The notes beneath the pieces were generated by a model, which was not told where the DNA came from, ran no database searches, and saw only the letters and a list, made by a program, of their open reading frames with translations. A DNA stretch of 63,711 nt, filler included, from Bigelowiella natans CCMP2755 (lineage: Eukaryota > Protista > Cercozoa), in the NCBI GenBank assembly GCA_000320545.1. It is 7 parts of 7 records of this genome, joined end to end, with 100 filler letters (N's around TTAATTAATTAA, not from the genome) between each part and the next. Parts side by side here need not be neighbours in the genome. Positions count along the whole stretch, not along the records: positions 2,310 to 30,380 come from ADNK01002520.1; 6 more parts are not named here. One strand, given 5' to 3'. Below, piece by piece: positions 14,321-21,396 of the stretch. How positions within the stretch are numbered: the first letter of the stretch is position 1; every line of letters begins with the position of its first letter. A program made the position numbers and the translations under genes.

Positions 14321-17300
14321 ATGAACGGGTACAGAAGTTTGTTGAAGGCTGGGACCATCGCTCGGTCAGCTACGAAATATGCAAGGAGGAGGATCTCCCT
14401 CTCACGCCGTCGATATCTTGTAGCACGAACAATCCAGAACGCTTCTTACGCAATCAGCTCCTTGGTCAACCGTCCATCATCAACACGGGTATGCATCAAT
14501 TTAACAGGATCAACAATCTTCGCCTGGCGATCCTCTGCCTCCCCCATGTGTTAATGGGCTGTTATTGCTACTCACACCAGGGTGCCCCCCCCCCATCCAT
14601 CGACCTATCCGTGTAACTACGCTCACTCCATTGATCTCATAACTTCATAGGCTCTTCATACCTCTAGTGTAAAATTGGATAAAGCGGATAATAAAAATTC
14701 GCATAACGAATCGATGGTTATAGGGCCTGAGTATGAAGGTGCGACGAATCGAATGACGAGCGACGGAATAATACCGATCATCGACTGCTATGCCAGTAGT
14801 TTTGACCAACTTCGCCTCTAATCGGCAGATTGGCGCAATTCACTTCCACTCGCTGATTTCTTCATTTCATTTCACAACAGATTCGTATATCACCTCGGTG
14901 CTGAGCGATGTGAAGGTAGTTAGTTACCCATACACATAAATAATAGGTCGGTGAGATTGTAGGCTTCATGTGCAGACATAAAACTGACAGGTTTTTCTCT
15001 TGTTGTGGCGCATTCCATCGTGGTATCATTTTTGCAGACAATTGCAATGGTTGGGGCTAGTACGAAGTGGAATCGTCCTTCCTATTTTGCCATGGTCTTC
15101 TTCCTCTCCCCCACCTCTCCGCCGCCGCCGCCGCCTCTCTTTTCACTGCCAATTCGAATGTTAGAGAACTGCGATTTAAGAATGTATGAAGGCTTTAAGC
15201 CAACCAGCGCAGACTAGATTGTAGAATGTCAGCTTCTGCAACAACCTGTAACCTTCCCATAACACAAAATTGGAGCTTTAGCCTTCTGTTTGATTGATGC
15301 AGAAATATCTTCAAGACAAGGGCTATCGGGTCATCCCGGTGAATCCAGGGGCTGCTGGGAAAGAAATCCTCAAAGAAACTTGCTACGCATCCATCGCCGA
15401 TATTCCAAATGTAATTATATCTCTCTGCATTCCTCTACCAATGAGTATATGCCTTTCATTTATCATCATCGAATTCATAACGTTTACTTTTGGCTAAATA
15501 TCCTCAGGATATCACCATTGACATGGTCGATGCTTTCCAACGTGCAGAAAGGTGTCCTGCCATTGCGATGGAAGCCGTGCAAAGAGGGGGAGTGCAGGTC
15601 GTCATTCTTGGACATATATCATGACAAGATTTAGTGAATGATGGTAAATGAATGGTATCAAACGAGGCCACAGTTTTGCATCGTTCCGCAGCGATTTTCG
15701 AACATTGTCTGGATGTATTTGCTTTACACATCGATATTCTATCTGAGGCCATTTACAAAACACGTGCATATATTATTGGCTCATCACACATCCCGACAAA
15801 GGTGCTGTGGCTGCAGCTGGGCATTGTGAGTGAGGAGGCAGAAAAGATTGCATGTGATGCCGGACTTCGCGTGGTAGTATTTGCAGTTGAAAGGGAGTTG
15901 TGATAGCCGCCAGCGCAGTGATACTGCGAAGAGGAGGAAGAGGGGGAAACTCAAACACATTCAAAATTATCGATTTTGCTTCGGAAACAACGCCAAAAAC
16001 ACATCGGTGTTCCAAGACCCTTGATAGCAAACAAAAGACCTTATTATGTATTAGTAATAGAAGAAGAAGAAGAAGAAGAAGAAGAAGAAGCAGCGCGTAA
16101 GTTGCAAGCCATGTGGAGAAATCATGCAGATTATTGTTTAAATCGTCGGTGTGTGTTTATCGTGCATCTTTGCAGGTGATGAACCGGTGCCCCAAGATCG
16201 AATTCTCTCGTCTCTACGGCGAATTAAGCATGCACGGTCAACGATAAGATAAAATAAGAAGCTAATCCCCAGCAATTTCCTGATCATAGCAAATCGTGTA
16301 AAACAAGCATGTTTCCTTCTGGGGTGATAATGAGTGCGAACATCCATTGTTATGAGCGAAACCACTGCTTTCATCGTTGCTTCTCATCATTCGTAATCAT
16401 CGTTGTAGGATTCAATTCTGACGTCATCTCCTCTAAGAGAAGACCTGTGGGGACTGCCAATGAGGAGCGCAAGGTGGGGATGCACATACCGCACACACAC
16501 ACACACACACACACACACACACATACATACACACACACAACTGCAGAGTTGAGTCCATCATCTATTCATGCAACGCCGACCTTCTTCTTCTTCTTCTTCT
16601 TCTACTTCTTCTTCTTCTTCTACTTCTCCTCCTTAATCGTAACTCTGACGTGTGCAATGTGTGGACTGTGCATGCGTGTGCCGATACCCTTCCATTTCAC
16701 CCGCTGGCAGGGTAATTTCAGTGGTGCGACGGTTGGATTCGAGACGAAGGCCATACATGCAGGAGCCTCTCCCGGTAAGACCTACTTGAATCATGCAGCG
16801 ACATCAACATCCCAACAACAAAGATAACATAAATGACCATCGTCTAGACGCTACTAGTACGATTAGAATGCGGTTTATCATTGACCTATGTGCAACCTCT
16901 CTCCCTCATTCCCTCCCTCCCCCCCCTCTCTCTTTTTACATCTACTCTTAGATCCGACGACTGGCGCTCGTAGCACCCCGATTTTTCAGACAACGGCGTA
17001 ATATTTGCATTGCGATTTGGCATGATTCTCAATAGCATTCACATTATACGTATTCTTCTTCCCCCCCCCCCCCCCCCCCTCCTCCTCTTTTCTCTTTTCA
17101 TTTTTCTTAGCTATGTGTTTGAGGACGTGGACAACGCCGCGTCGCTGTTCAATCTCAGTGTAAGAACACAAATCCGCATTATCTGTGTATATAAGTGTTG
17201 TACGACTGTGTGTGTGTAAGTGCAGTGGTTTTTTAAAAAACAGAGAATATACCCACACACTAACACACTCACACACACACACACACATATATGTATATAT

Positions 17301-20300: not shown

Positions 20301-21396
20301 CGCAGTATACTTATTGAGTAACGACGATGACAGAGATCTTGGGCCTACAATGGCGCCTATGAACGCCTTCCTTACTATCACAGGTCGTGCTGATACACAC
20401 ACACACACACACACACACACACACACATGTAACATACAATATCTAGCATTGACATAAAAACCTGCTTGTATGTGTAACTGTCCGCTAGGAATCGAAACTC
20501 TGTCGCTGCGTATGGAACGCCACTCTCAAAACGCACAAAAGGCAATTTCCTTTCCATCAATGACCAACGCATCCATCCCCATGTCGATCATCATAATCAC
20601 GCTCACGAGAGATCTCCTTCCTCTCCAACATTTTCATTCTCACTCATATTTCGCTAGGTGGCTGAGTATCTAGCTTCGCGCGACGATGAGGTCGAATGGG
20701 TCTCTTATGCTGGACTTACAGGAAGCAAATATGAACCACTCGTCAAAAGGTACTAGTGACTTACCAATCACGGCATTGTCAAATGGAAAGTGATTGAGTC
20801 TTAATTTTTAAACTCGTGTGAAATCACATCGATGGTGTTTGTCCTCGGCCTTGTCGTCGTAATTCATGATGACTCAGAAGCACAATTATTATTGCTGGCA
20901 TCATCATCATTATCAGGTATATGCCCAATGGCGCAGGATCTGTATTCACGTTCGGACTTAAAGGAGGGTTTCAGAAAGGAGTGAAGGTCGTGGAGGCATG
21001 TGAAATCTTCTCGCATCTTGCCAACATTGGAGACACCAGGTATCAGCAGACGAAACCAACACTCTACGAAACGCTTATAGTTCGCAGAAAAGTAGCTGTA
21101 GTATGATGAATTATAACCCGGGAGAAAGCTAACGATGTGCCTGCGTAGATATGATGAAGACACGGTTCCACCGTATTATTTGTGTCTCCATCTCATAGCT
21201 ATGGATTATTATTAATGACAATATTTGATGTGGTTGAAGGTCCCTAATTTTGCACCCAGCCTCTACGACGCACAGGCAGCTTACGCCAGAACAGCGGGAA
21301 ACTGCAGGGGCAGGCGACAATGTGATTCGGCTTTCAATTGGCCTTGAGACAGCGGAAGATCTTATTAAAGACTTAGAGCATGCGCTAGCGGCATAA
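14321..21396 (+). CDS. Fusion: mitochondrial-type leader + YccU-like CoA-binding domain + O-acetylhomoserine sulfhydrylase (MetY/Met17), ~27 exons
   Basis: CoA-binding part: [52 protein letters not shown] part: [55 protein letters not shown] site [43 protein letters not shown]. The junction exons are in frame. Confidence 0.88.

What the first reader, a model, noticed from the sequence alone, without database searches (positions are those of the whole stretch)
14321..21396. Mitochondrial-leader fusion of a bacterial YccU CoA-binding domain with O-acetylhomoserine sulfhydrylase
Seen: exons 16176-16236 (phase 1), 16409-16473 and 16711-16774 splice with canonical GT-AG and no stop, reading ...[58 protein letters not shown]..., so both domains lie in one ORF behind an Arg-rich leader. 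Knowledge (from recall, unverified): the extended CoA-binding C-terminus and this MetY style resemble alphaproteobacterial genes that sit next to each other, whereas fungal Met17 is a stand-alone cytosolic enzyme. Inference: a bacterial gene pair was transferred, fused, given an organellar leader and ~26 introns. The CoA-binding module may tie homocysteine/cysteine synthesis to acyl-CoA status. This would be a Rosetta-stone clue to the poorly characterised YccU function.
Basis: partly seen in the sequence, partly recalled or inferred. Interest (0 to 1): 0.85.

Follow-up and report, generated by a model that had tools for sequence, protein, structure and literature searches.

The report
Mitochondrial CoA-binding homocysteine synthase fusion gene
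This is a real, expressed 27-exon gene of the alga Bigelowiella natans that joins a small CoA-binding domain to the methionine-pathway enzyme O-acetylhomoserine sulfhydrylase, but the fusion was inherited ready-made from alphaproteobacteria and is already catalogued in many bacteria and protists.

Summary
One 27-exon, 26-intron gene (14321-21396, +) encodes 680 aa: an Arg-rich leader, a YccU-type CoA_binding_2 domain and a complete O-acetylhomoserine sulfhydrylase (OAHS). One 2213-nt contig runs from the 5'UTR through both domains.

The same fusion, in the same order, occurs in hundreds of ~600-aa alphaproteobacterial proteins, which NCBI names simply as O-acetylhomoserine aminocarboxypropyltransferase. 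The window's protein aligns to them end to end at 68-71% identity and shares the junction motif.

In 49 of 80 alphaproteobacterial loci the two genes are separate but adjacent; in 13 they are fused. Trees place all eukaryotic copies (chlorarachniophytes, dinoflagellates, diplonemids, picoeukaryote contigs) in one clade beside fused marine Rhodospirillales-like bacteria. So the fusion came before the transfer.

The window is B. natans. JGI model Bigna1 80093 already carries both domains, with two exon errors. No paper in the searched library discusses the link, so it remains a catalogued but unstudied clue to YccU function. The role of the CoA domain is unknown; I infer regulation or partnering.

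The parts
14224..14320 (+). 5'UTR as far as the spliced contig reaches; in-frame TAA at 14312-14314
   Evidence: X4 record 15 begins at 14224; sequence read
14321..14738 (+). Exons 1 (14321-14488) and 2 (14651-14738): N-terminal extension, aa 1-85, presequence-like
   Evidence: Joint 14488|14651. Net charge +13 in aa 1-56, first acidic residue at aa 66. No similarity to the bacterial homologues.
14881..16473 (+). Exons 3-9: CoA_binding_2 (YccU-type) domain with conserved C-terminal extension, aa 86-248
   Evidence: All joints seen in spliced contigs. Exons 5, 6 and 7 hit PF13380 positions 21-52, 55-79 and 83-105 in order. Exon 5 matches PDB 2DUW, 1IUK and 2D59.
15038..15094 (+). Exon 4, the Rossmann Gly-Ala-Ser stretch; missing from JGI model Bigna1 80093
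   Evidence: Joints 14915|15038 and 15094|15303; 19/19 identical to P0345; gap in P0408
16474..16710 (+). Intron 9, inside the variable inter-domain linker; 237 nt, stop-free in frame
   Evidence: Joint 16473|16711 in X3, X4 and X1; open frame 16258-16824
16711..21396 (+). Exons 10-27: O-acetylhomoserine sulfhydrylase domain, aa 249-680, stop codon at 21394-21396
   Evidence: PF01053 and TIGR01326 exon hits; exon-wise identity to homologues; joints up to 19641; loose end at 20027 reads the start of exon 23
19199..19264 (+). Exon 19, carries the PLP-binding lysine motif (Ser-Thr-Thr-Lys)
   Evidence: Aligns to residues 201-221 of solved OAHS 7KB0 with the Lys matched
20542..20657 (+). The only GC-AG intron (intron 24)
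   Evidence: Frame and homology require it; not covered by the reads laid
15372..15373 (+). AA in the window, GG in all three contig runs: Lys140 becomes Gly, the residue conserved in the family
   Evidence: table 3; alignment A1

Best explanation
This is a nuclear gene of Bigelowiella natans, the locus of JGI model Bigna1 80093. It encodes a 680-aa protein made of a presequence-like leader, a YccU-type CoA-binding Rossmann domain, a short variable linker and a complete PLP-dependent OAHS of the MetY/Met17 family. The OAHS part most likely makes homocysteine from O-acetyl-L-homoserine and sulfide (direct sulfhydrylation). It most likely acts in the mitochondrion, alongside a separate stand-alone OAHS encoded elsewhere in the genome. 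The gene belongs to an existing fused family. In Alphaproteobacteria a CoA-binding gene lies directly upstream of metY, often behind an enoyl-CoA hydratase family gene. In a marine Rhodospirillales-like lineage the two became one ORF, and that fused gene passed into eukaryotes, apparently once. There it gained a leader, and in B. natans many introns. Shown: one spliced mRNA, the domain identities, the bacterial fused and adjacent forms, and congruent domain trees. Inferred: enzyme activity, mitochondrial location, and that the CoA domain acts as a ligand-sensing or partner module of the sulfhydrylase rather than as a catalyst.
For: A single spliced contig and the joints. The 680-aa model. Pfam hits exon by exon. 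The PLP-lysine motif aligned to 7KB0. CoA-domain matches to 2DUW, 1IUK and 2D59. A single HSP over aa 84-679 at 68-71% identity to ~608-aa bacterial proteins, and 76% to a MMETSP protein. Those proxies pass NF004650 and TIGR01326. Of 80 bacterial loci, 13 are fused and 49 adjacent. The junction motif is shared. In the concatenated IQ-TREE tree the 21 eukaryotic rows form one clade (SH-aLRT 93), joined with 12 fused bacteria (98), with adjacent pairs outside. The CoA-only tree agrees (88). The model is identical to Bigna1 80093 apart from two model errors. Arg-rich leaders occur on all the eukaryotic orthologues. A second OAHS and a MetX-like gene are present in the genome.
Against: No targeting predictor or localisation data were available. 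Enzyme specificity (sulfide, methanethiol, O-acetylserine) cannot be read from sequence. The AlphaFold model of the nearest orthologue gives no fixed orientation between the domains (pTM 0.67, linker pLDDT below 50). The complex test on an unfused bacterial pair gave only weak support (0.48 against a best control of 0.00). The tree backbone is partly unresolved, and support values come from quick searches. Many of the 'eukaryotic' rows are unnamed transcript-sized contigs, judged eukaryotic from their leaders and clade. Runs X3 and X4 are labelled RNA only as a guess, although intron-less contigs argue for cDNA.
Confidence: 0.8

Rival explanations
1. One reading: two adjacent bacterial genes were transferred to the eukaryote and fused there.
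For: Adjacent unfused pairs are the commonest state in Alphaproteobacteria (49 of 80 loci). Several pairs are separated by few bases, so fusion is easy and has happened more than once.
Against: The nearest bacterial relatives are themselves fused, at 68-71% identity in one HSP. The residues just after the CoA domain's C-terminal extension are shared between eukaryotic and fused bacterial proteins. Eukaryotes plus fused clade 1 form a supported group in the concatenated (98), OAHS-only and CoA-only (88) trees.
Confidence: 0.06
2. Two proteins are made: a CoA-binding protein ending near 16250-16480, and an independently started sulfhydrylase. The joined form would be a minor read-through.
For: An in-frame ATG lies inside intron 9, in the open frame 16258-16824. 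Contigs cannot show transcript ends.
Against: There is no stop codon at the end of exon 8 or 9. The spliced joints 16236|16409 and 16473|16711 appear in three runs at the same depth as the other joints of the contig. In Amorphochlora the junction lies inside one exon. Intron-less single ORFs occur in the picoeukaryote contigs and in bacteria.
Confidence: 0.04
3. The fused gene descends vertically from the alphaproteobacterial ancestor of mitochondria and was lost in most eukaryotes, rather than arriving by later horizontal transfer and spreading between protists.
For: All eukaryotic copies form one clade with an alphaproteobacterial sister. They carry presequence-like leaders, and are found in Rhizaria, Alveolata and Discoba.
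Against: Identity to living marine Rhodospirillales-like bacteria is high (about 70%). Distribution is patchy and confined to marine protists in the data seen. The branching inside the clade does not obviously follow the eukaryote tree. The root and the timing were not tested.
Confidence: 0.15
4. The CoA domain takes a direct part in the chemistry, for example by presenting a CoA-linked sulfur species (CoA persulfide) or a thiol released from an acyl-CoA by the neighbouring crotonase-family enzyme. It would then be more than a regulator.
For: A three-gene order of enoyl-CoA hydratase family gene, CoA-binding gene and metY occurs in 51 of 80 loci. Independent fusions exist in both orders. The complex test passed weakly.
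Against: No catalytic residues are known for this family. The upstream crotonase-family genes match different generic NCBIfam models. No such gene lies next to the B. natans copy. This is purely inferential.
Confidence: 0.1

Closest known systems
Bacterial fused CoA_binding_2 + OAHS proteins (e.g. alpha proteobacterium BAL199, Thalassobaculum litoreum; annotated as O-acetylhomoserine aminocarboxypropyltransferase)
   Same: Same domain order, same conserved C-terminal extension and junction motif, and 68-71% identity over about 600 aa in one alignment.
   Different: The bacterial proteins have only 5-17 residues before the CoA domain, no introns, and often an enoyl-CoA hydratase family gene upstream. 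The window's gene has an 85-aa leader and 26 introns.
Eukaryotic orthologues: Amorphochlora amoebiformis AAMO2058_000136100, a MMETSP protein (P0345), Alexandrium catenella 'CoA-binding domain-containing protein', and the diplonemids Namystynia and Artemidia
   Same: Same architecture with Arg-rich N-terminal extensions; one clade. Amorphochlora also keeps the head-to-head E1-dehydrogenase neighbour.
   Different: Intron load differs. Amorphochlora has aa 68-329 in one exon where B. natans has eight introns. The picoeukaryote contigs are intron-less.
Stand-alone OAHS: MetY/Met17 (NCBIfam TIGR01326, NF004650; PDB 8SF5, 7KB0, 4KAM, 2CTZ)
   Same: Full-length colinear OAHS domain with the PLP-lysine motif. 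The nearest proxies score above the curated cut-offs.
   Different: No CoA-binding domain. The genome's own stand-alone copy on contig C1218 is only 51% identical. That fungal Met17 is cytosolic rests on my own knowledge.
YccU / PH1109 / TT1466 small CoA-binding proteins (Pfam PF13380; PDB 2DUW, 2D59/2D5A, 1IUK/1IUL)
   Same: Same Rossmann-type fold family. The BAL199 domain matches 2DUW at E 4e-40, and exon 5 of the window matches it at 1e-07.
   Different: Those are ~140-aa single-domain proteins of unknown role, without the roughly 25-residue C-terminal extension seen in the alphaproteobacterial metY-linked subfamily.

Membership tests
O-acetylhomoserine sulfhydrylase (Pfam PF01053; NCBIfam TIGR01326 / NF004650) | Colinear match to the family profile over the whole catalytic domain | tested here: met
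   Exon hits to PF01053 and TIGR01326 lie in order along the gene. aa 255-678 align to stand-alone OAHS P0039 at 62%.
O-acetylhomoserine sulfhydrylase (Pfam PF01053; NCBIfam TIGR01326 / NF004650) | PLP-binding lysine in the Ser-x-Thr-Lys motif | tested here: met
   Exon 19 aligns to residues 201-221 of solved OAHS 7KB0 with the lysine matched. The column is invariant in A1.
O-acetylhomoserine sulfhydrylase (Pfam PF01053; NCBIfam TIGR01326 / NF004650) | Whole-protein score above the curated cut-off | tested here: inconclusive
   The joined model was not sent to any search tool. Proxies at 70-76% identity pass: P0345 scores 675.5 and P0190 685.3 against the 667 cut-off of NF004650, and all four tested pass TIGR01326. 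P0323 is just below NF004650.
O-acetylhomoserine sulfhydrylase (Pfam PF01053; NCBIfam TIGR01326 / NF004650) | Catalyses OAH + sulfide to homocysteine | not testable with these tools
   Needs an enzyme assay or complementation.
CoA_binding_2 / YccU-type CoA-binding domain (PF13380) | Profile match above the gathering score, colinear across the domain | tested here: met
   Exon 5 alone scores 34.1 bits against a cut-off of 22.8. Exons 6 and 7 continue at profile positions 55-79 and 83-105. It is the only PF13380 hit in the genome.
CoA_binding_2 / YccU-type CoA-binding domain (PF13380) | Actually binds CoA | not testable with these tools
   Only similarity to CoA-binding crystal structures is available.
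Fused CoA_binding_2-OAHS family | Both domains in one ORF, CoA domain first, with the shared junction after the C-terminal extension | tested here: met
   Spliced contig; single HSP over aa 84-679; junction alignment; clade with fused proteins.
Mitochondrial presequence | Positively charged N-terminus free of acidic residues, without a signal-peptide core | tested here: met
   11 Arg, no Asp/Glu in aa 1-65; maximum 12-residue hydropathy 1.05, and that lies inside the domain. Orthologues have similar leaders.
Mitochondrial presequence | Predicted or observed import into mitochondria | not tested
   No targeting predictor is on hand, and the joined protein could not be sent to tools.

The most novel reading that the evidence does not exclude
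YccU-type CoA-binding proteins are dedicated partners of MetY. The domain binds CoA or a CoA-linked thiol species and gates or feeds direct sulfhydrylation. That would assign a first function to this widespread orphan family, and would mean that scattered marine protists run a CoA-coupled homocysteine synthesis in their mitochondria.
Probability: 0.2. Interest if true: 0.6.

Novelty: already known. Interest (0 to 1): 0.33.

Why it matters
The locus itself is ordinary: a catalogued gene of a catalogued family, with a corrected exon model. What is worth keeping is the comparative pattern. Three lines of evidence connect the orphan YccU-type CoA-binding family to O-acetylhomoserine sulfhydrylase. 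First, the gene order is tight and conserved. Second, there are at least two same-order fusions and one reversed fusion. Third, the eukaryotic branch consistently carries presequence-like leaders. I found no paper in the searched library that discusses this link. It gives a cheap, direct experiment for the family's function. It also flags a possibly mitochondrial direct-sulfhydrylation route in chlorarachniophytes, dinoflagellates and diplonemids.

Tried and rejected
- Raw RNA run X20 laid only 6 reads and says nothing.
- The representative search with exon 27 returned mostly fragments, with no self hit. It was useful only because two long hits revealed the fused forms.
- The look-up of encoding contigs found no record for P0190.
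- Paper searches on the fusion, on YccU and on B. natans OAHS found nothing relevant.
- The AlphaFold model of P0345 gave confident domains but no inter-domain geometry.
- Complex prediction on the unfused pair from L041 scored 0.48 against a best control of 0.00. The runs agree in at least 89% of contacts and the partner pLDDT is at least 88. The verdict is weak support only; no interface was given.
- Bacterial contamination or a mis-assembly was considered and rejected, because of the introns, the spliced contigs and the conserved synteny with Amorphochlora.
- Plastid targeting was rejected because there is no signal-peptide core.
- The spliced 680-aa model was built only inside scripts from the window file. 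It was not sent to any search, family, fold or look-up tool. Whole-protein family scoring, targeting prediction and folding of the B. natans protein itself were therefore left out, and database proteins served as proxies.
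Full report
**The gene**

Reading 14000-21600 and translating three frames showed short coding blocks separated by microsatellite-rich spacers. The genome is a 91.4-Mb eukaryotic assembly. Its only PF13380 hit, and several PF01053 exon hits, lie in this gene.

I laid four public runs on 14200-20199. This gave GT..AG joints at 14488|14651, 14738|14881, 14915|15038, 15094|15303, 15410|15508, 15597|15802, 15873|16176, 16236|16409, 16473|16711, 16997|17111, 18269|18485, 19043|19199, 19264|19491 and 19534|19641. 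In run X4 all of them belong to one 2213-nt contig at depth 35 that starts at 14224.

I combined the joints with frame and splice-site constraints. The record coordinates of the contig require 169 nt between 17405 and 18485, which equals exons 14-16. The resulting exon list is:

14321-14488, 14651-14738, 14881-14915, 15038-15094, 15303-15410, 15508-15597, 15802-15873, 16176-16236, 16409-16473, 16711-16774, 16952-16997, 17111-17159, 17328-17405, 17700-17750, 17968-18015, 18200-18269, 18485-18587, 18943-19043, 19199-19264, 19491-19534, 19641-19691, 19975-20027, 20334-20383, 20489-20541, 20658-20749, 20917-21039, 21240-21396.

That is 27 exons and 26 introns, one of them GC-AG, coding for 680 aa. 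Exons 23-27 lie outside the stretch laid. They rest on three things: a loose end at 20027 that reads the start of exon 23, exon-wise identity to homologues, and the contig length.

**Domains**

- **Leader.** Residues 1-85 have no bacterial counterpart. Residues 1-65 hold 11 Arg and no acidic residue, and there is no hydrophobic core.
- **CoA domain.** Exons 5-7 hit CoA_binding_2 in order. Exon 5 matches the solved CoA-binding proteins 2DUW, 1IUK and 2D59.
- **OAHS domain.** Exon 19 carries the PLP-lysine motif, aligned to solved OAHS 7KB0.

It was used only inside scripts.

**The fusion is not new**

A representative search with exon 27 turned up two long proteins. P0082 (613 aa) has PF13380 followed by PF01053. 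P0123 (595 aa) has the reverse order.

I then searched with P0082's CoA region while letting candidate length follow the whole protein. This gave 777 long proteins. The listed ones are nearly all ~600 aa, carry both domains, and are named O-acetylhomoserine aminocarboxypropyltransferase in Thalassobaculum, BAL199, Roseospira, Stellaceae and Acetobacteraceae. One is an Alexandrium protein.

The window's model aligns to such bacterial proteins in one HSP over aa 84-679 at 68-71% identity. No solved structure covers both domains. The proxies pass the NCBIfam equivalog NF004650 and TIGR01326.

**Adjacency in bacteria**

I used the BAL199 CoA domain as query against one genome per species. This returned 80 loci, almost all alphaproteobacterial. 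I built profiles from my own alignment and classed the loci:

| State | Loci |
|---|---|
| Fused | 13 |
| CoA-binding ORF directly upstream of an OAHS ORF, same strand | 49 |
| CoA-binding ORF only (some at contig ends) | 18 |

The gap from the CoA gene's stop codon to the OAHS domain has a median of 48 nt. An enoyl-CoA hydratase family ORF precedes the CoA gene on the same strand in 51 loci, with a median distance of 46 nt. These ORFs match only generic crotonase models.

The C-terminal extension encoded by exons 8-9 is conserved in stand-alone, fused bacterial and eukaryotic proteins. The first residues of the linker are shared by the eukaryotes and the marine fused bacteria.

**Phylogeny**

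- **OAHS-only FastTree (153 rows).** Fused versus adjacent needs only two changes. All leader-bearing sequences form one clade.
- **Concatenated IQ-TREE quick search (65 rows, 565 columns, LG+C20+F+G4).** The 21 eukaryotic rows form one clade (SH-aLRT 93). That clade joins 12 fused marine Rhodospirillales-like bacteria (98). Adjacent pairs lie outside. A second fused bacterial clade (Roseospira, Stellaceae, Acetobacteraceae, Caenispirillum) arose separately.
- **CoA domain alone.** It gives the same eukaryote-plus-fused-bacteria split (88).

The two domains therefore share one history, and the fusion predates the entry into eukaryotes. Support comes from quick searches, and the root rests on one long outgroup. 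Whether the transfer was ancient or later remains open.

**Organism and relatives**

A search with the nearest protein, P0345, listed an Amorphochlora amoebiformis protein and 'jgi/Bigna1/80093'. The model is identical to the latter except in two places. The JGI model lacks exon 4, and it reads exons 23-24 wrongly. From my own knowledge, Bigna1 is JGI's code for Bigelowiella natans.

Cluster look-ups named diplonemid orthologues. Two metagenome contigs with eukaryote-type neighbours carry intron-less copies. All of these carry Arg-rich extensions. Amorphochlora keeps the same head-to-head E1-dehydrogenase neighbour, but has the junction inside one 262-aa exon.

**Mechanism**

The OAHS assignment is strong. 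The genome also has a stand-alone OAHS that is 51% identical, and a MetX-like gene. The fused copy therefore looks like a second, organellar isoform.

For the CoA domain I can only infer a regulatory or partner role. The evidence is thin on both sides:

- AlphaFold on P0345 gives two confident domains, a disordered leader and linker, and pTM 0.67.
- The complex test on an unfused pair passed only weakly: 0.48 against a best control of 0.00, with at least 89% contact agreement and partner pLDDT of at least 88.

**Verdict**

The gene and the architecture are already catalogued. What remains interesting is the unstudied functional link.

Noticed in passing
window 15372-15373: The window reads AA (Lys140). 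Contigs of X1, X3 and X4 read GG (Gly), which is the nearly invariant residue of the family. X1's contig there is unspliced, so a strain or assembly difference is likelier than RNA editing.
   Followed up: partly
window 12030-13088 (-) and L110:1-2647: An E1-dehydrogenase (branched-chain oxoacid dehydrogenase E1-alpha-like) ORF lies head to head with the fusion gene. The same divergent pair is kept in Amorphochlora amoebiformis.
   Followed up: partly
L110:3345-4130: The Amorphochlora orthologue encodes aa 68-329 (CoA domain, linker, start of OAHS) in one exon, where B. natans has eight introns. Most of the 26 introns are therefore not shared.
   Followed up: partly
G000:C1218:166699-168068 (-), locus L102: A second, stand-alone OAHS gene with two coding blocks, 51% identical to the fused copy's OAHS part. 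A more distant PF01053 gene lies on C751 (30%).
   Followed up: partly
G000:C2164:86395-89033 (+), loci L010/L011: Exon-like hits to homoserine O-acetyltransferase (TIGR01392). This would supply the OAHS substrate.
   Followed up: no
window 15038-15094 and 20334-20541: Public JGI model Bigna1 80093 (P0408) omits exon 4 and misreads exons 23-24. The model given here corrects both.
   Followed up: yes
L022-L101, e.g. L017:7181-7981 and L040:2961-4016: An enoyl-CoA hydratase family gene lies directly upstream of the CoA-binding gene in 51 of 80 alphaproteobacterial loci. In BAL199 a 2-phosphosulfolactate-phosphatase-like gene overlaps the 3' end of the fused gene.
   Followed up: partly
P0123 (L015:3277-5064); P0172, P0226, P0233: Other architectures of the same CoA domain exist: OAHS followed by the CoA domain (reversed order), the CoA domain with a PNPOx-like domain (PF01243), and the CoA domain with EamA.
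   Followed up: no
window 16059-20427: Thirteen di- and trinucleotide microsatellite arrays lie inside the introns of this one gene.
   Followed up: no
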